A DNA stretch of 64,000 nucleotides from Podarcis vaucheri (taxonomy: Eukaryota). Shown piece after piece: positions 28,696 to 43,891 of this stretch; within the stretch, counting starts at the first letter, position 1; each line of letters opens with the position of its first letter. The notes under the pieces were generated by a model that saw only the letters and a program-made list of their open reading frames with translations, was not told the origin of the DNA and ran no database searches. Made by a program: the position numbers and the translations under genes. Location of the stretch: NCBI GenBank assembly GCA_965113315.1, contig OZ220371.1; one strand, written 5' to 3'.

Positions 28696-30949
28696 GAATG
28701 TGAGTACCAGGGTCATTGGCAGCTGTACTCAAAGGTATTACTCCATCCTATTTTCCTAGTAAAAGAAAGAGTACTAGCTGTGATACTTAGGCTGGATTCC
28801 TGGGCACTTTTTTCCATCTAAGCAATTGCCTGATTGTGGTGCGGTGCAAATCCAGAGTGCATGTGAATTGCACTCAAAGATCCACCAGGATGGAGGCTGC
28901 TCCTTAAACCACCACTACTCCTGTTTCAGCAGTGTCTACGCAGGAACTCATTATTCATGATTTCATCTTGCTACTTAAAATGTGTAATAGCTCAAAGGTT
29001 CCGTTGATGGATTTCTTCCAGCTCTTTGATGAGCCAAAGATAATTTCTCCATGTTCTCCCCTAACCAGTCCCCACTCCCTGTTTGTTGTTTAATGTTTAC
29101 ACTTGTGCTACATGTCTCTACTAGACTGGAAGATCCCCAGGGCAGGGATCTTATCATATTTGTCTAAGTAGCATGCACACCCATGAAGTGATAGATAGTA
29201 TTTGCAGCTGCAAAGCATGGTGGAAATTGCTACAGCGGAGTAAGCATATATGTTGGCTTTGTGTGTAATACCCCAGACTTTCAGTCCCTGTCAACTGAAT
29301 ACTCCATGGAAGCAAACAGAAATCTCTGCACAGCAATCTGGCACTCAGCAATCTTTTCCCACGTTATTTGATTGACATGGACAGAAAATTGCCTTTCCAA
29401 GCTCTTTGTACCTGCTTCATGTTTCAGAAATCAAGCCCAAGCATAGGAGTAAGGACACCTGACTATATAAAGTGCCTTCACTTTCCCAGTCTTTTACAGC
29501 TTCCTCTTCCCCAGAACACCTTCAACAAAATTATATCTTCTGCAGACCAACATATTTGAGTAACTTACTATTACTACTACCATACACAGCATTTTAATTT
29601 GCAAAGATTACTACTGCTGCTTTTGCCATCCAAGTACATGGCACTTTGCAGTGCAATGTGGGCACAAACAAAAACAGGTTCCTGCCCTTTTACAGTCTTT
29701 GTGTTGAACCCTACAAAGTATATAATTGCCACTTCTATTGTACAGGTGGGGAATTGTGACAGCATGGTTTGCTGAAGGCCACACTACAAACCTCTGATGA
29801 AGTTGGGACTTCAGCCAAGGTCTTCCATGACTAAGACTAATTCCCTCGTTCTCCCCTCTCTAAGCCTAAGGGCAGGGTAGCCAACACAGTGCTGGACTAC
29901 AAGCTCCAGATATTATTGGGCTACAACTCCCATAATCCTCTGACCATTGGTCATCCTGGCTGAGGCTGGCAACATCTGGGAGAGTAGCCATTGGCTACTC
30001 CTGCTTATACCCCTTCTCCATGCATAAGAGGAGCCCTGCTCCACTGGACCTAATATACAACTTTTCATGAGTAAGCAAACAGACCCTTCTCTGAAAATCC
30101 CACACACAGCTTACGGAATGCAATGGTCCTTCCCAGCCGTTTCTCCCCAGTGAGTTGTATTCAGTGGCATGTAGTAACTATAAGAACTTAGGCAAATTTG
30201 GTGTTTCCTCTTCCGCTTCCCCTCCCCCCTTTTCCCTTTTGTGTCTTCTCTTTCAGATTGTAAGCCTGAGGGCAAGGACTGCCCTGTTTCTTATTGATCT
30301 GTAAGCTGCTCTGGGAGCTTTTTTGGCTGAGGTGCAACCGTGTAAATAGATAATAAAGAAACATGAAGGCTCCATGTAGCTATCATAATTAATAGCCAGC
30401 CATTGTTAGACGGGTATCCTTATTCTCTTCAGTGGAGACAATGAACACACCCTTTTCATACCTTGAGCTGCTTCCTCCTTGGATGCAGTTGGTGGGAGAT
30501 GGCAGTGTGCACAGTACTTCTGTAGACCAAAGTGATGCTGATCTACAGTTCACCCAAGAACCAAAGGATACATGAAGATCTTTCCTTTCACGCAGATTGT
30601 CAAGGCCACTTCAACTTCATATTGACATTAGTTGATGCTGGAAGGACCTATTCTGGAGAGTTATTTAACTCTCCACTTCAGATTACCTGAGTCAAAGCAT
30701 TTTTTAAAAAAGGCACAGCAAGTGAGATGTTTCTGCAGTATGGCAGCCCCTCCCCCTCCCTAGATGCCTCTTGTGTATTTAGAGCAGGAGTGGGGAACTT
30801 TTGGTCCTCCAGATGCTGCTGAACTACAACTCCCATCAGCCCCAGCAAGCATGGCCAATGTCCATAGATGATGGAAACTGTAGTTCAGCAACAAAATGAC
30901 AAGCACAAATTCAATCATGACAAGAAAAAAACAGCCTATTGGTCTAGGA

Positions 30950-31120
30950 GGGGTGTATTGGGCATTAGAGGTAGTACCTCCAGTGGGGGAACATGCCAAG
31001 CTCCTTCTTTGGCATTATCCTGCACTCAGCTCTCACCTGTGGCTCCTAGAAGCTGTCAGCATGTGACAGCAGCCACACCCCGGGAAAAAGATTTGACTGG
31101 CTGGCTAAACCAGGTGAGGG
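30950..31120 (+). ncRNA. Candidate HDV-like self-cleaving ribozyme at the element 5' end
   Basis: Hand fold: P1 GGGGTGT/ACACCCC; P2 CTCTCACCTG/CAGGTGAGGG; P3 GGC/GCC; P1.1 CC/GG; J4/2 G-C31105-TAAA. P4 is weak. Confidence 0.5.
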
Positions 31121-32032
31121 TAGCCAATGGATCTCAATCCTTCAGTGAGTTAGGGACTTTCCCTGCCTACAAAGTGAGTTAGGGACTTTCCCCGCCTACA
31201 AAGACAGGCTGCAGCATATTGAGGGGATGAGAGCAATAGTGTGTCCAACAGGGAAGAAGGCAGTTTCTCACTAGCATAGCTGGGGGGACGGGGTGCACTG
31301 GGCGGCCACTTACTGCAGGGGCGGCACTTACCACGGGGGGCCTGCAGTGTGCCCAAGCCACGCGTCTCTCCTGGGAGTAAATCAGTGGCTTGGGTGCCTG
31401 TAGGCACCATGCCACCCAAAAAGGTGATGGGGGCTCGCGTCCGCCTGCCACCTTCCTCTTAGCAGCTCCCCAGCTGAGGGGGAGGCGGCGGGCAGCTGTG
31501 AGCTCCACACCACCTTTTTGGGTGGTGTGGCCTCCATGCAGACTCTGCCCTGGCTCACCCCACCCCATGGGCTTCTCACCCTGTCCCCATCCCTGGGCGG
31601 CTAGCTACGCTGCTGAGTTTCTCCATGTGCTTAGAGGGAAATGAGGGCCAGATGGGGCTCATCAACCTAGGAAGGTAGCCCACCTAGGAGAAGGAGAACT
31701 CTGATCCTAAACCTCCACTGCCTTGCAGGATATCTTCGGGAGAAGAAAGGGGGTAAGGAGTAAACCCTACACAAATCCCCAAGACAGTCAGATGGTGCCT
31801 TGAAGGCCTTCTCCTGGCAACTCCTGCAGCCAAGCTGGTGCCAAATGTATTGCTCTGCTTTCCTTTGGACCACATCAACAAGGCGGTTGTCTGGGCAGCC
31901 CAAGACCTCCATACACACTGCCCAGCCTTGTGCTCCAGGCAGGTCACTTCGGTGCTGCTAGTGCAGCAGTATGACTTCAGCCCCGGAGGTATACTTCATT
32001 GTCTCTCAAGACAGATGGATGCCCACAAAATA
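30950..32032 (+). mobile_element. Non-autonomous, internally deleted RTE-like non-LTR element
   Basis: Flanked by direct repeat GTCTAGGAG (30942-30950, 32033-32041). GC-rich and non-coding. Contains an RTE-5'UTR-like block (CTAGGAGAAGGAGAACTCTGATCCTAAACC) and an RTE-like 3' end (CATTGTCTCTCAAGACAGATGGATGCC plus a CA/A-rich tail). Confidence 0.65.
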
Positions 32033-32974
32033 GTCTAGGAGCCCTGTCCCCCCCCCAAAAAAAGTTAAAAACTGACATTGCTGCCCTACAGCTTGTTTGG
32101 TAAACCACTGTATTGGAGTTGGCTGAGCCTGTGCCAGCAGCAGTAGATGTTTAGAAGGGATCCCTTGCCTGGACTGTCCCTGGCCAAAAAGACTTGAAGA
32201 TTGTGGTTTCCATCCAGATGATGCACATCTGTGCTAATCACTTTTAAATCACTTTCTCAATGCCAACAGGGTTGATTTTTCCAGCCCTGCATACAGCATA
32301 TATTTCACGAATAATTGGCTGCTCAGGGTAAAGTTGGATGAGTTTGAAGCAGCAAGAGAGAGAGATTGGCATTAATTGCTTTGTGGTGTTCGCTCATACA
32401 CTTGTTCCCTCCAGTGCAGGTTACAACAGAGCCTCCGCTTTCTCGCATTTGTTCTTTTTGCTGCCTCAGCTACCTTTGGTAATGAACTACGAGATAGATG
32501 GCCTTTAAGAGCACATGCAACAATAAAACATAAAAACCCCACTGCCAACATAATCTAATAAGCTTTCTAATTTGCTCAGGTTGAAGAGCTTCACAGATGT
32601 TGGGAATTTAATAAAATCTATCTTGCTTCTGCATCTTTGCCAACAGCTGAATCCTTCTGGAGTTTTTACTGCTGCAGAAACAGGTCTAAAGCAGTACATG
32701 GAAAGTAAGGATCCCACTAATGGGCTACTACTAAAGGTGCAGCTCATGAGAAGTGGGCTGTAGAAAGAAGGGAGATCAGTCTCATAAGAGAAGAAAGTAA
32801 CCAGCTGATTGTCAGGGCTTGTAAAGCACCATGCCTGCATACGTTTCTTTCAAACCAGATGGGTGAAAATGGGCCACTTGATGTCAGGTGATTGATAGGT
32901 GTCAAACCAGGTGTGCAGGGGAGGTAAGACTCGAGCCTACCAGCTGAATCCAGTTTCAAAATCCTGGGGTAGAT

Positions 32975-39571: not shown

Positions 39572-42500
39572 TCAGTACAAACCCAACTTCTGTACATAGG
39601 TACAGTGTTGATCCCTTGATACAATCTTGGACAATACATCAGCAGGAATTTCATTACCTGGCATATAGGACACCGTTACGAGTCCCTTCTGAATATGTTC
39701 CCTAGCATGTTGCACCTTCAATTGCAAGTGCTTCGTGCTTTGCTTGCAACCTTCTGAATTCAGCAAAGCCAAACATGCCTTGTTGTCCTGGTAAACCTGG
39801 ATTGGACATTTGACAGGAATTTTCATGTCTTTGCACAATTGTAACAACCATTCACAATCCTTAAGTGAATAAGACAGTGCATTCAGTTCAGCTTCACAAG
39901 TACTTAAGCTAATTGTTGTTTGCTTCTTGCATGACCAATCAAATAGACCCTGATTGTACATGTAGCAAACTCCAGACGTACTTTTCCTGTCTGTAGTGTC
40001 ACTTCCAAAACTTGCATCTGCAAAAATCTCAAGACCACCAGACTTCTGATTGTTAAATCTCAGTCTGTAATGCATAGTGCCTTTCAAATAGCGTGCTATG
40101 CGTTTCAGAGCTTTCCAATCCTTAACAGTAGGATTGTTAACTTGTCTGCTTAGCAAATTACAGCTAACAGCAATGTCAGGTCTTGAACATCTGGCAATGA
40201 AGTTTAGCTTGCCTAGCACACTTCTGTACAGTGTAGTGTCAGAAAATGCTTCTTCAGTGTCTTCTACCTGATAACCTGTTGTCATGGGTGTGTCTACAGG
40301 GTTAGCATCCATCAGGTTTAGTTTGTTTAACACATCAGCAATTTTCCTTGACTGGTGTACTAGAATGTTACCACTTTGATCTTTCTCTATTTCCAGAGAT
40401 AGGTAGTTGTTTACCTCACCAAGATCTTTCATGTCAAAGTGCTCTTTCAGTTGAGCTAGGGCGTTATTGTACATTGAGACATCTTTCCAAAAGAATAAAA
40501 TATCATCAACATAAAACAAACAATACAGCTTCTTTTGCCCTTCCTCTTTGACAAATACACATGGATCAGCTTTCCCTTGCTGAAAACCTAGAGAAAACAA
40601 TGCTTCAGTGAGTTTTGTGTGCCAACACCGTGCACTTTGTTTGAGACCATAAAGGGACTTCTTCAGAGCACAAACAAATCCCTGTTTTACCTGTACGCCA
40701 TCAGGTGGAAGCATATAAAGTGATTCACCTAGAGATCCGTACAAAAACGCTGTATTTACATCGTGGTGACTAATGTGTAGATTTTCCTCTGCAGCTAGCT
40801 TGAGCATGAGCCTTATGCTCTCATATCTCACCGTGGGTGAGTAGGTCTCGTGATAGTCTTCACCTGGTACCTGTGCAAAACCTCTGGCTACCAATCTGGC
40901 TTTGTGTCTGACTATCTTGCCATTTTGATCAGTCTTCGCTTTGAAGACCCATTTGCTTCCAAGCAGTTTCATTCCTGGAACTTCTGGAACTAGCTCCCAT
41001 GTTTTGTTCTTTTCTAAGGAATCAAGCTCAGCCTTCATGGCGTTTAACCATGGCTCAGCTTCCTTAGAATCCAAATCCTGGATTTCTTGGAAACTTGAAG
41101 GTTCAAATACCTTCTTGGAGCTTTTAACAGCTGCTACTGCTGTCTTGGCATATTCATCAGCAAATCTCTTTGGAGGTCTGCCTTTTGTAGCTCTTTGTGA
41201 CCTGCGAATCATCCTTTGGTCTTCAACACTTTCCTCTTCCTTCTTAGGAGAAAAGTGACCTATTGTGAACAATGGTTCTTCCAATTCCTGATCAGAGCTT
41301 TCAGAGGGTCGCATAGAGGCTTTCGCACTCTTGAAATCCTCTGAAGTATCCGATTCAGTTTCAGACTCAGAATCAGAACCTTCATCAGTGGGTGTGGGTT
41401 GTTGTTGCTTATACTCAGTCTCATCACTGTCATCAGGATAACATTGAAAAATTCCCACGTTCTCCCCCCACTTGGCATTGTACTCAACACTTCTTGTGAG
41501 CCTTATTGTCTTAGAGTCAGTCATCATTATTCTGTAAGAACCTTTCTGATAACCTAGAAAGATACCATGCAATCCACGTTTGCCTAATTTGGAGCTTTGT
41601 GGTGAGTGAATCCACATATCAGAACCAAAAATTCTCATGTGTTTGATGTATGGTTTCTTACCAAACATCTTCTCATACGGGGTACAACCAATCGCTGAAG
41701 ATAACCTGCGATTGTAACTGTAAACAAAACATGAGAGAGATTCGGCCCAATAACTCTCTGGAAGATTTGCATCATGCAGCAAGGTTTTTAACCCTTGAAG
41801 CAATGTTTGATTTGCCCTTTCGCAAAGTCCATTCTGCCATGGCGAGCGAGGACTGGACAAATCGTGTTGAATTCCTTTCTCAGTCAGAAAAGCTTCAAAC
41901 TGCTGAGAAGTGAATTCCCCTCCACGATCTGTGAAAAGAATTTTTATCTTCTTACCATGCACATTTTCCAACCAAGCACAGAATTCCTTGAACCTTGGAA
42001 AAGCCTCTGATTTTTGCTTGAGATTGTACACATAAATATACCTGGAAAATGCATCAATGAGAACCATGAAGAACCTATTGCCACCTAAAGAGGGCGATAG
42101 TGGACCAACTAAATCAGCATGAACAATCTGGTATGGTTCTGTAGCTTGCCTACTAGACACCTTACCTTTCGCAGCCATTTTCACCTTGTTTGCTGCGCAT
42201 GCCTTGCACTTCATGTGGTACCTGCAGGGTTTAATAGTCATACCTTCAACCAAGGCAGGCATTTTAGATACTGCCTCAAAATGCAAATGACCAAATTTTC
42301 GGTGAAAATCATGAATACATTCTGCATGCAAACTTTTGTTAGAACCTGCAATGCAACAAGTCTCATTCTGCACAACATCATCATAATACAAAACAAACAA
42401 ACGATCAACGCATTCAGCATGCAATACATAATCGTCTTTCTTTGTGATGGTGCATTTCTTGTTCTTGAAGGAAACGTCAATGTTGCGTTCATTCAGCTGC

Positions 42501-43570
42501 ATCACACTGAGAAGATTGTGTGTGGCATCTGGAACGTAAAGTACATCATGTATCTCTAAGTCCAAACTGTGAAGAACAACAGTTCCGTAGCCTTGACTGG
42601 GGATCGTGTGGTCATCCGCCTGGTGAATCGCACCTTCCTGCGGTGTAAAAGACACGAACAGTCTCTTATCGTTGCACATGTGGTGTGTAGCTGCTGAATC
42701 AACAACGAAGAAAGATCTAGACGTCTTCTGGACCTTTGCAACCTTTGGAGTGAAGCGTGAGACCATTGCCTTGTGCTGCGTTGTCCTGGACACCGGACCT
42801 TTGCCTTTGCTTTGGCCTTTTCCACGCGATGAGCTTCCGCTGCGCTGCTCTGTCTTGGCCTTGGGATATTTGCAATCCCTCTCCATATGGCCTAGACGTC
42901 CACACGAGTAGCATTTCACTGCCTTCAAAGCTTTGGCGCCCTCTGGTGGTTCCACTGCACTCTGGGATGACGTCTGTAAAGACTCCCCCATACCCATGCA
43001 GCTAGCACCCCGGCGATCTGCTTCATTCTGAATCACGGCAGTAACATAGGCTACTGTGAGCTGAGCAGTTGGTTGAACAGCAATCTGAGTGGCAACGGAC
43101 TCCCAACTTGGTCCCAAAGAATGTAGTATCATAAAGGAATACACAGCCTCTGGAAAGTTGAGTCCTCTCTGTTGCAGCTCATGTCTCAGATTCTGCATCT
43201 CCATCAGGTGTTTACGCACATCTCCACCTTCAGCAAGAGCCATATCATGCAGCTTGGCATAGTAGTACATTGAGGAACCAGCCTCTGTCCTCAAGTGAGC
43301 CTGTCTTAAAGAGTCCCAAATTTCTCTGGCTGTGGTCTTTCCACGCAACAGACAGAGCTCTTCTGGGGATACTATCAACGTAAGCGTTCCCCGTGCTTTG
43401 GAATCCTTAGCATTCCATTCAGCTGTAACTGGAGCTGGGGGGTTGTCTGTAATAACATTAAACAGACCTTCTTTCCGCAGAACTGCCTCTGCATATAGCA
43501 CCCACTCCGTGTAGTTATTCTTATTGAGCTTAGGAATCCCAAAAGCATCAACCAGCCTTACGTTTGCCAT
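39572..43570 (-). CDS. Copia Gag-Pol polyprotein (~1332 aa from the probable ATG at 43570; frame open to 43726)
   Basis: Gag PKLNKNNYTEW; zinc knuckle CYSCGRLGHMERDC; protease VVDSAATHHM; integrase HHCC (HRKFGH..CKAC) and D..D35E (HADL/TDRGGEF/NGLCER); RT KARLVARGF, YGLKQS, YVDD; RNase H FADAS, EAE, QDN, ADVLSK. Integrase before RT is the copia domain order. Confidence 0.97.
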   Translation of the reverse strand: MANVRLVDAFGIPKLNKNNYTEWVLYAEAVLRKEGLFNVITDNPPAPVTAEWNAKDSKARGTLTLIVSPEELCLLRGKTTAREIWDSLRQAHLRTEAGSSMYYYAKLHDMALAEGGDVRKHLMEMQNLRHELQQRGLNFPEAVYSFMILHSLGPSWESVATQIAVQPTAQLTVAYVTAVIQNEADRRGASCMGMGESLQTSSQSAVEPPEGAKALKAVKCYSCGRLGHMERDCKYPKAKTEQRSGSSSRGKGQSKGKGPVSRTTQHKAMVSRFTPKVAKVQKTSRSFFVVDSAATHHMCNDKRLFVSFTPQEGAIHQADDHTIPSQGYGTVVLHSLDLEIHDVLYVPDATHNLLSVMQLNERNIDVSFKNKKCTITKKDDYVLHAECVDRLFVLYYDDVVQNETCCIAGSNKSLHAECIHDFHRKFGHLHFEAVSKMPALVEGMTIKPCRYHMKCKACAANKVKMAAKGKVSSRQATEPYQIVHADLVGPLSPSLGGNRFFMVLIDAFSRYIYVYNLKQKSEAFPRFKEFCAWLENVHGKKIKILFTDRGGEFTSQQFEAFLTEKGIQHDLSSPRSPWQNGLCERANQTLLQGLKTLLHDANLPESYWAESLSCFVYSYNRRLSSAIGCTPYEKMFGKKPYIKHMRIFGSDMWIHSPQSSKLGKRGLHGIFLGYQKGSYRIMMTDSKTIRLTRSVEYNAKWGENVGIFQCYPDDSDETEYKQQQPTPTDEGSDSESETESDTSEDFKSAKASMRPSESSDQELEEPLFTIGHFSPKKEEESVEDQRMIRRSQRATKGRPPKRFADEYAKTAVAAVKSSKKVFEPSSFQEIQDLDSKEAEPWLNAMKAELDSLEKNKTWELVPEVPGMKLLGSKWVFKAKTDQNGKIVRHKARLVARGFAQVPGEDYHETYSPTVRYESIRLMLKLAAEENLHISHHDVNTAFLYGSLGESLYMLPPDGVQVKQGFVCALKKSLYGLKQSARCWHTKLTEALFSLGFQQGKADPCVFVKEEGQKKLYCLFYVDDILFFWKDVSMYNNALAQLKEHFDMKDLGEVNNYLSLEIEKDQSGNILVHQSRKIADVLNKLNLMDANPVDTPMTTGYQVEDTEEAFSDTTLYRSVLGKLNFIARCSRPDIAVSCNLLSRQVNNPTVKDWKALKRIARYLKGTMHYRLRFNNQKSGGLEIFADASFGSDTTDRKSTSGVCYMYNQGLFDWSCKKQTTISLSTCEAELNALSYSLKDCEWLLQLCKDMKIPVKCPIQVYQDNKACLALLNSEGCKQSTKHLQLKVQHAREHIQKGLVTVSYMPGNEIPADVLSKIVSRDQHCTYVQKLGLY

Positions 43571-43891
43571 TTCTGCTGCGTCACAGTCCTGCAGCTTCAG
43601 CCAAAAGCACTTGTAAAAGTACTTTCGTTTTCTTAGCCATCCAAGCCTGTGAGCTTGTGCCTTTAGAGCCTTGCCTGTAACACGGCAAAACGGCTTTAAA
43701 AGTTCAAAGTCCAGCCATAAAACCATAAACTAGGAGCTGGCAGGCTGCCAGGCTGCTCCGGGCAGCATGAGCACATACCTTCATCAATCAAACACGACGC
43801 GCAGAGCAGATAACGCGATCCGTTCCTCTGTACCTCTGCCGGCATTCCGACTCGGCTGGAGTCTTTAATCCTCAGTTTGATTTACGTCTTT

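What the first reader, a model, noticed from the sequence alone, without database searches (positions are those of the whole stretch)
30950..31120. Candidate HDV-like ribozyme with an atypical L3 hairpin, starting exactly at the 5' end of an RTE-like retroelement
Seen in sequence: the element boundary, defined independently by the TSD GTCTAGGAG, coincides with G1 of a nested double-pseudoknot layout. P1 is 30950-30956 GGGGUGU with 31075-31081 ACACCCC (7/7 Watson-Crick). A 73-nt J1/2 follows, with its own hairpins. P2 is 31030-31039 with 31111-31120. P3 is GGC 31041-43 with GCC 31072-74. L3 starts UCC, and its CC can pair with GG 31082-83 as P1.1. J4/2 is G-C31105-UAAA just before P2'. Established: HDV-like ribozymes cleave 5' of G1 and define the 5' ends of R2, RTE and L1Tc/ingi non-LTR elements. 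Unusual: L3, normally ~7 nt and part of the active site, is 28 nt here and holds a perfect 7-bp hairpin (GCUGUCA-gcaug-UGACAGC), so standard descriptors would probably miss it. Inference: this may be an undescribed HDV-like variant used by a lizard retroelement family. Caveats: P4 is weak in this aged copy, and an alternative helix (UGUGGCU/AGCCACA) competes with P1/P2.
Basis: partly seen in the sequence, partly recalled or inferred. Interest (0 to 1): 0.85.

Follow-up and report, generated by a model that had tools for sequence, protein, structure and literature searches.

The report
HDV-like ribozyme candidate, lizard retroposon
The first 171 bases of a 1.08-kb lizard retroposon copy can fold into the knotted shape of a hepatitis-delta-type self-cutting RNA, with the predicted cut exactly at the element's 5' edge and an unusual extra hairpin in the catalytic loop, but cutting has not been tested.

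Summary
A perfect 9-bp target-site duplication bounds a 1083-bp insertion whose first base is G1 of P1.

The layout is far from chance. A deliberately loose HDV-like descriptor hits only position 30950 in 128 kb. It hits nothing in 30 window shuffles or in 20,000 anchored local shuffles.

Contigs from three DNA runs and one possible RNA run show that the core (31019-31166: P2, P3, the L3 hairpin, P1', P1.1, J4/2 and P2') belongs to a very high-copy retroposon family. The 68-nt leader that carries the P1 5' strand is essentially single-copy.

No Rfam model matches. P4 is unstructured in this copy, and a rival helix is in the minimum-free-energy fold. Neither covariation nor cleavage could be tested, and the "RTE-like" label could not be verified.

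The best reading is an HDV-like ribozyme variant with a hairpin inserted at the 3' side of L3, which defined this copy's 5' end (confidence 0.55). The scan had already reported the same family on other DNA of this genome (s1-852196).

The parts
30942..30950 (+). 5' copy of the target-site duplication GTCTAGGAG. Its last G is also the proposed G1.
   Evidence: only two exact matches in the window, flanking the insertion
30950..30956 (+). P1 5' strand GGGGUGU. The predicted cleavage is 5' of G30950 (or G30951 with a 6-bp P1).
   Evidence: 7/7 Watson-Crick, duplex -11.8 kcal/mol; this 7-mer occurs 5 times on the + strand of 64 kb
30957..31029 (+). J1/2, 73 nt, with two hairpins (30968-30980 and 30982-31026), a P1.2-like peripheral domain. 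Positions 30951-31018 are essentially single-copy.
   Evidence: hairpin -20.1 kcal/mol, z -3.4; depth table and loose ends at 31019
31030..31039 (+). P2 5' strand
   Evidence: 10 bp with 31111-31120 (one G-U), duplex -15.8 kcal/mol
31041..31043 (+). P3 5' strand GGC
31044..31051 (+). Single-stranded 5' part of L3, UCCUAGAA. CC 31045-46 is the P1.1 partner. UCCUnG resembles the HDV L3 start (from my own knowledge).
31052..31070 (+). Perfect 7-bp hairpin inserted in L3 (GCUGUCA-GCAUG-UGACAGC)
31072..31074 (+). P3 3' strand GCC
31075..31081 (+). P1 3' strand ACACCCC
31082..31083 (+). GG of P1.1 (J1/4)
31084..31104 (+). P4 region, unstructured in this copy. The family majority has C at 31091, which would allow a 4-bp AGCU/GGCU stem (31089-92/31099-102).
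   Evidence: 0 kcal/mol; table 3 (31091 A>C in about 75% of depth)
31105..31110 (+). J4/2 with the candidate catalytic C31105 in the context G-C-U-A-A-A-C
   Evidence: the C.AA requirement is met in the descriptor scan
31111..31120 (+). P2 3' strand
31019..31166 (+). High-copy core module shared with the retroposon family in organisms A, B and I
   Evidence: tables 2, 7, 8: contig pieces run from 31017/31019 to 31166/31174
31167..31631 (+). Internal segment missing from the common, shorter family form. Partly low-copy; 31510-31617 is at about single-copy depth.
   Evidence: table 5 (joints 31166>31632/31634 and 31268>31632) and table 2
31632..32032 (+). High-copy 3' module of the retroposon, ending ...CACAAAATA with no poly(A)
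   Evidence: depth falls from about 47,000 to about 190 just past 32032-32049
32033..32041 (+). 3' copy of the target-site duplication

Best explanation
Positions 30950-31120 are the 5' terminal HDV-like self-cleaving ribozyme of a non-coding, non-LTR-type retroposon.

Proposed mechanism (inferred). The element has no promoter of its own and is transcribed as part of a longer host transcript. P1' (ACACCCC), directly 3' of P3/L3, pairs with GGGGUGU. The double pseudoknot (P1-P1.1-P4 stacked beside P2-P3) forms, helped by a structured J1/2 domain and a long P2. C31105 in J4/2 then catalyses cleavage 5' of G1. This releases an RNA whose first base is the first base of the DNA copy found here.

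How it differs from described HDV-like ribozymes. L3 keeps an 8-nt single-stranded 5' part (UCCUAGAA), but a 7-bp hairpin is inserted before P3'.

What is shown: the helices, their non-randomness, the coincidence with the TSD edge, and the high-copy status of the core. What is inferred: catalysis, and tolerance of the L3 insertion. This particular copy may now be impaired, because P4 has a mismatch relative to the family majority and a rival helix competes.
For: - Helices are exactly as described.
- A loose descriptor gives a unique hit in 128 kb. It gives zero hits in 30 window shuffles and zero in 20,000 anchored shuffles.
- GGGGTGT occurs about once per 13 kb per strand, so its presence exactly at the TSD edge has a chance of about 1e-4. 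This holds even though the leader is not shared with the family.
- A perfect 9-bp TSD bounds the insertion.
- The core 31019-31166 is very high-copy in two DNA-run species. It is also present in contigs of a possible RNA run from a third species.
- The family majority letter C at 31091 restores a P4 pair.
- The nested part with P1 forced is -53.3 kcal/mol. Adding P2 (-15.8) makes it comparable to the MFE of -66.5.
- Precedents: large structured J1/2 and 12-bp P2 in Agam-2 ribozymes (PMC4908430); P1' position sets the cleavage site, P4 is dispensable, and 5' junction microhomology occurs in R2 (PMC3774820); HDV-like ribozymes occur in RTE and baggins elements (PMC6765202).
Against: - No Rfam HDV-family hit, even at E<=10 on 181 nt.
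- The MFE fold uses the rival helix UGUGGCU/AGCCACA instead of P1.
- The P4 region is unstructured in this copy.
- I found no paper describing a 28-nt L3 with a hairpin, and L3 forms part of the active site (PMC4908430).
- J4/2 has 5 nt between the candidate C and P2'. From my own memory, HDV has about 3.
- The P1 5' strand lies in a single-copy leader, so conservation of P1 in the family is not shown.
- No covariation data and no cleavage data.
Confidence: 0.55

Rival explanations
1. It is a relic or non-catalytic structured 5' UTR. The fold descends from an HDV-like ribozyme or resembles one, but the hairpin in L3 and the weak P4 make it inactive. The helices serve another role, such as RT/RNP recognition, RNA stability or IRES-like translation in the autonomous partner, or no role at all.
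For: L3 forms the active site (PMC4908430) and is grossly enlarged here. P4 is unstructured. The rival helix is in the MFE fold. There is no Rfam hit.
Against: This does not explain why the TSD-defined 5' end coincides to the base with a 7/7 complement of P1' inside a private leader. The single-stranded L3 start UCCUAG, the P1.1 partners and the C-U-A-A motif are all retained.
Confidence: 0.3
2. It is chance pairing. The high-copy core merely contains ordinary hairpins, and the reader fitted an HDV-like scheme to them by allowing long J1/2 and L3.
For: The descriptor had to be loosened (L3 28 nt, J1/2 73 nt). The whole 171 nt folds only modestly better than shuffles (z -2.2). The descriptor I tested was written after seeing the candidate.
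Against: The same loose descriptor gives no other hit in 128 kb of real sequence and none in the shuffles. Independent coincidence with the TSD edge has a chance of about 1e-4.
Confidence: 0.07
3. The 1.08-kb insert is not a retroposon with a ribozyme head but some other mobile element, such as a solo-LTR-like or DNA-transposon-derived unit. On this reading the 5' pairing is unrelated to RNA processing.
For: GC-rich; tandem 29-bp units each carrying GGGACTTTCC; weak terminal similarity TGT..GGGCAT / ATGCCC..ACA; no poly(A).
Against: No TG...CA ends abutting the TSD and no real terminal inverted repeats. A 9-bp TSD. Internally deleted variants share both ends (joints), which is typical of non-autonomous non-LTR derivatives.
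Confidence: 0.08

Closest known systems
Large HDV-like ribozymes of mosquito retroelements (drz-Agam-2 family)
   Same: Same helix order: P1, a long structured J1/2 (P1.2), an extended P2 (10 bp here, 12 bp there), P3, P1', P1.1, P4, J4/2 and P2' (PMC4908430). They sit at the 5' end of promoter-less non-LTR elements (PMC6765202).
   Different: L3 here is 28 nt with a 7-bp hairpin. P4 is weak or absent. No Rfam model match. The host is a lizard. Activity is untested.
R2 element HDV-like ribozymes
   Same: P1' immediately 3' of P3/L3 decides where cleavage occurs. J1/2 ranges from tens to hundreds of nt. P4 is often missing. 5' junctions are shaped by microhomology (PMC3774820). The shared G between the TSD and G1 here fits that last point.
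   Different: R2 is site-specific in rDNA and autonomous. This element is dispersed, non-coding and high-copy. An L3 insertion is not reported for R2; only altered L3 spacing in the jewel wasp is.
HDV genomic/antigenomic and CPEB3 ribozymes
   Same: Nested double pseudoknot. G at +1. A 3-bp G/C P3. L3 begins U-C-C-U-n-G (from my own knowledge of the HDV sequence). A 2-bp P1.1. C followed by N-A-A in J4/2.
   Different: Those are compact (about 68-85 nt) with a 7-8 nt L3 and a solid P4. This one is 171 nt.
The roughly 614-bp retroposon reported earlier in this scan (s1-852196)
   Same: Same genome. HDV-like fold with a hairpin inside L3. The length fits the common form inferred here (core plus 3' module, joined 31166>31632).
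   Different: This copy carries an extra 465-bp internal segment and a private 68-nt leader. I could not see the other report's sequences, so identity of family is inferred.

Membership tests
HDV-like self-cleaving ribozymes | Nested double-pseudoknot order P1-J1/2-P2-P3-L3-P3'-P1'-P1.1-P4-J4/2-P2' | tested here: met
   all strands are in the right order and adjacency, and this is the unique descriptor hit in the window
HDV-like self-cleaving ribozymes | P1 of 6-7 bp whose first nucleotide is the cleavage site (PMC3774820, PMC4908430) | tested here: met
   7/7 Watson-Crick, starting with G at the TSD edge
HDV-like self-cleaving ribozymes | P2 of at least 5 bp closing the outer pseudoknot | tested here: met
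   10 bp, -15.8 kcal/mol
HDV-like self-cleaving ribozymes | Short single-stranded L3 (about 7-8 nt) forming the active site with J4/2 | tested here: not met
   L3 is 28 nt with a 7-bp hairpin. Only its first 8 nt are single-stranded and HDV-like.
HDV-like self-cleaving ribozymes | P1.1: 1-2 bp between L3 and J1/4 | tested here: met
   CC 31045-46 with GG 31082-83
HDV-like self-cleaving ribozymes | Catalytic C in J4/2 | tested here: inconclusive
   C31105 lies in G-C-U-A-A-A-C before P2'. The spacing is longer than in HDV, and its role is not testable here.
HDV-like self-cleaving ribozymes | P4 helix (variable, dispensable in many R2 ribozymes) | tested here: not met
   31084-31110 is unstructured. 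The family majority C31091 would give 4 bp.
HDV-like self-cleaving ribozymes | Match to curated covariance models (Rfam HDV-type families) | tested here: not met
   no such hit, even at E<=10
HDV-like self-cleaving ribozymes | Compensatory changes in the helices across copies | not testable with these tools
   one search returns contig summaries only. No other copy is in the window. Public scans were blank.
HDV-like self-cleaving ribozymes | Mg2+-dependent self-cleavage giving a 5'-OH at +1 | not testable with these tools
   needs a bench experiment
Non-autonomous derivative of an RTE-clade non-LTR retrotransposon | Target-site duplication, no LTR or TIR, no coding capacity, high copy number with internally deleted variants | tested here: met
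Non-autonomous derivative of an RTE-clade non-LTR retrotransposon | 5' and 3' ends shared with an autonomous RTE element | not tested
   There is no RTE in the window (one search found only self-matches; one search shows the nearby ORF is copia-type). No repeat library is available.

The most novel reading that the evidence does not exclude
The leader 30951-31018 is foreign to the family. On this reading a 5'-truncated or recombined source copy lost its native P1 and J1/2. Its intact core (with the L3 hairpin) then cut a read-through transcript at the first upstream 7-mer complementary to P1'. That RNA was retrotransposed once, producing this copy. The copy would then be a natural record of in vivo self-cleavage by an HDV-like ribozyme with a hairpin in its catalytic loop. 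It would also record cleavage-site retargeting of the kind inferred for R2 evolution.
Probability: 0.2. Interest if true: 0.75.

Novelty: new variant of a known kind. Interest (0 to 1): 0.58.

Why it matters
HDV-like ribozymes are defined by a compact active site built from L3 and J4/2. A naturally amplified version with a helix inserted into L3 would widen the structural definition of the class. It would also explain why descriptor and covariance searches miss such elements.

It would add squamates to the hosts whose promoter-less retroposons are released from host transcripts by self-cleavage. Full-text searches found no paper pairing HDV-like ribozymes with lizard, Anolis or squamate.

The private leader of this copy offers a testable natural experiment on how P1' chooses the cleavage site.

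Tried and rejected
- Rfam at gathering threshold on the whole window, and at E<=10 on 401 nt and 181 nt: no ribozyme family matched.
- Self-BLAST of the element against the window: no second copy, only an internal palindrome.
- Exact 23-mer of the L3 hairpin/P3' in metagenome and viral contig collections: blank.
- Protein route to other copies, searching the open frame across the core (54 aa) against predicted proteins: no candidate.
- Search of the scan's own findings by sequence: blank.
- Alignment of the leader to the family's 30-nt upstream consensus: not significant (p 0.09 right-anchored, 0.3 local). Homology of the leader is therefore unresolved.
- That 30-nt consensus, plus the 11 nt that follow it in the window, was typed in from the output. 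It does not fold stably.
- Solo-LTR and DNA-transposon readings were rejected on end structure.
- The nearby 1384-aa ORF is a copia-type polyprotein with no similarity to the element.
- Differences in the orthologous copy of organism B fall in J1/2 only (30996 keeps a pair as G-U, 31014 breaks one). They are uninformative.

Full report
**What is in the sequence**

- GGGGTGT (30950-56) and ACACCCC (31075-81) pair 7/7.
- 31030-39 pairs with 31111-20 as nine Watson-Crick pairs plus one G-U.
- GGC 31041-43 pairs with GCC 31072-74.
- The 28 nt between the P3 strands start UCC and contain a perfect 7-bp hairpin (31052-58/31064-70).
- GG 31082-83 can pair with CC 31045-46.
- G-C31105-UAAA precedes P2'.
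- GTCTAGGAG occurs exactly twice in the window, at 30942-50 and 32033-41. It encloses a GC-rich 1083-bp insertion.
- The last G of the TSD is also G1, so the boundary is good to within 1 nt. A 6-bp P1 starting at 30951 is equally possible. P1 of 6 or 7 bp is normal (PMC4908430, PMC3774820).

**Is it more than chance?**

I wrote a deliberately loose HDV-like descriptor:
- G-initiated 7-bp P1 with at most one G-U
- J1/2 up to 80 nt
- P2 of at least 6 bp
- 3-bp P3
- L3 of 5-30 nt with CC at positions 2-3
- GG after P1'
- C.AA within 7 nt of P2'

On both strands of the real window, the only hit is 30950. Thirty dinucleotide-preserving shuffles of the window gave no hit. Twenty thousand shuffles of the local GC-rich sequence, anchored at G1, gave none either.

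As a separate check, GGGGTGT occurs five times on the + strand of 64 kb. The chance that it sits exactly at the TSD edge is about 1e-4.

The descriptor was written after seeing the candidate, so these figures are somewhat generous. The real window serves as an independent control.

**Energetics**

The minimum-free-energy fold (-66.5 kcal/mol, z -2.2) uses P2 and the rival helix UGUGGCU/AGCCACA rather than P1. Other values:
- P1 duplex: -11.8
- P2 duplex: -15.8
- Rival helix: -10.1
- Best nested fold with P1, P3 and the hairpin forced and the P2 strands kept free: -53.3. Adding P2 brings the pseudoknotted fold to about the MFE level.

J1/2 contains a stable hairpin, 30982-31026 (-20.1, z -3.4). 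The P4 region 31084-31110 has no structure in this copy.

**Family context from public runs**

All runs are Logan contigs, so they show presence and majority letters but not individual copies.
- The 5' junction (30836/30890 to about 31044) is covered by single-copy-depth contigs in organism A (two samples) and organism B. The 3' junction (31999-32300) is covered in the same runs. No listed contig piece spans the whole 1083-bp insertion, but this coverage suggests it is present and orthologous in two species.
- Very high-copy homology begins sharply at 31017-31019 and runs to 31166/31174, then resumes at about 31618-32049.
- Joints 31166>31632/31634 and 31268>31632 show that the common family form lacks the internal 465 bp.
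- 31510-31617 is at about single-copy depth.
- The bin 30916-30969, which holds the P1 5' strand, has unique-sequence depth.
- Upstream of 31019, 240-286 family contigs per DNA run carry a different, conserved sequence (30-nt consensus, agreement 0.70-0.74). It is not significantly similar to this copy's leader.
- So P2, P3, the L3 hairpin, P1', P1.1, J4/2 and P2' are family features, while P1 and most of J1/2 in this copy are private.
- Within the core, the only majority difference listed is 31091 A>C. It would convert an A-G mismatch into a C-G pair of a 4-bp P4 (AGCU 31089-92 with GGCU 31099-102).
- 140 lower-ranked differences were not shown, so I cannot make a covariation statement.

**Interpretation**

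The layout matches the large HDV-like ribozymes of promoter-less non-LTR elements in several respects:
- A structured J1/2 and an extended P2 activate Agam-2 ribozymes (PMC4908430).
- In R2, the position of the roughly 7-nt complement of P1' sets the cleavage site, at distances of 23 to over 700 nt. P4 is often absent, and 5' junctions involve microhomology (PMC3774820).
- RTE and baggins elements carry such ribozymes (PMC6765202).

The deviation is L3. One reading keeps its catalytic part: the first 8 nt (UCCUAGAA) stay single-stranded and begin like HDV's UCCUCG (from my own knowledge), with the hairpin inserted just before P3'. Whether the active site tolerates this is unknown.

The strongest indirect argument for activity is that the insertion's first base coincides with the 5' edge of a perfect P1 complement, even though the leader is not shared with the family. 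Two readings remain open:
- This is a rare subfamily that kept P1.
- The core cut a read-through transcript at a fortuitous upstream complement and the product was retrotransposed once (the novel case).

**What is not supported**

- No Rfam HDV-type model matches.
- "RTE-like" is unverified. The element has no meaningful ORF. Its 3' end is ...CACAAAATA with no poly(A). The only long ORF nearby is a copia-type LTR polyprotein unrelated to it.
- I found no other copies to align.
- The possible RNA run holds family contigs, 39% of which continue into unlike sequence. This says nothing about cleavage.

**Relation to earlier scan notes**

The scan already reported an HDV-like fold with a hairpin in L3 in a roughly 614-bp high-copy retroposon of this genome (s1-852196). 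The common form I infer (leader plus 148-nt core plus 401-nt 3' module) fits that length.

I could not see that report's sequences, so I do not count it as independent evidence. Three other first-reader notes describe similar heads elsewhere in the genome.

**Verdict**

This is a real, non-random, HDV-like double-pseudoknot layout at the exact 5' end of a TSD-bounded retroposon copy. I read it as a new structural variant of a known ribozyme class, with confidence 0.55 that it was catalytically active in the source element. Covariation and cleavage assays are still needed.

Noticed in passing
window 31041-31050 and 32034-32043: The pre-insertion target TCTAGGAGCC (the TSD plus two bases) is a perfect 10-nt complement of GGCTCCTAGA, which is the P3 5' strand plus the start of L3 (pair I6). 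The rough chance that such a match involves the TSD is about 0.01. It may be coincidence, or it may hint at RNA-target pairing during integration.
   Followed up: partly
window 31144-31201: Two tandem 29-bp units each contain GGGACTTTCC, the classical NF-kB-type decamer. The first unit lies in the high-copy core, and the second opens the extra internal segment.
   Followed up: no
window 39572-43726 (- strand): An uninterrupted 1384-aa ORF encodes a Ty1/copia-type polyprotein: gag_2, zinc knuckle, integrase and RVT_2. It is an apparently intact LTR retrotransposon gene in a lizard genome.
   Followed up: partly
window 30754-30915: An extremely high-copy short repeat lies just upstream of the insertion, with summed contig depth up to about 1,000,000. 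Loose-end consensus on both sides suggests a palindromic, MITE-like element (tables 2 and 7).
   Followed up: no
window 31395-31540: An internal imperfect palindrome lies within the low-copy part of the element (arms 31407-31432 and 31505-31530, 85% complementary). It includes a perfect 10-bp hairpin at 31505-14/31521-30.
   Followed up: no
window 31348-31401: A 54-bp stretch inside the extra internal segment is itself high-copy (depth about 31,000) and has several majority differences from the window. It looks like a separate repeat, or a piece of the longer parental element.
   Followed up: no
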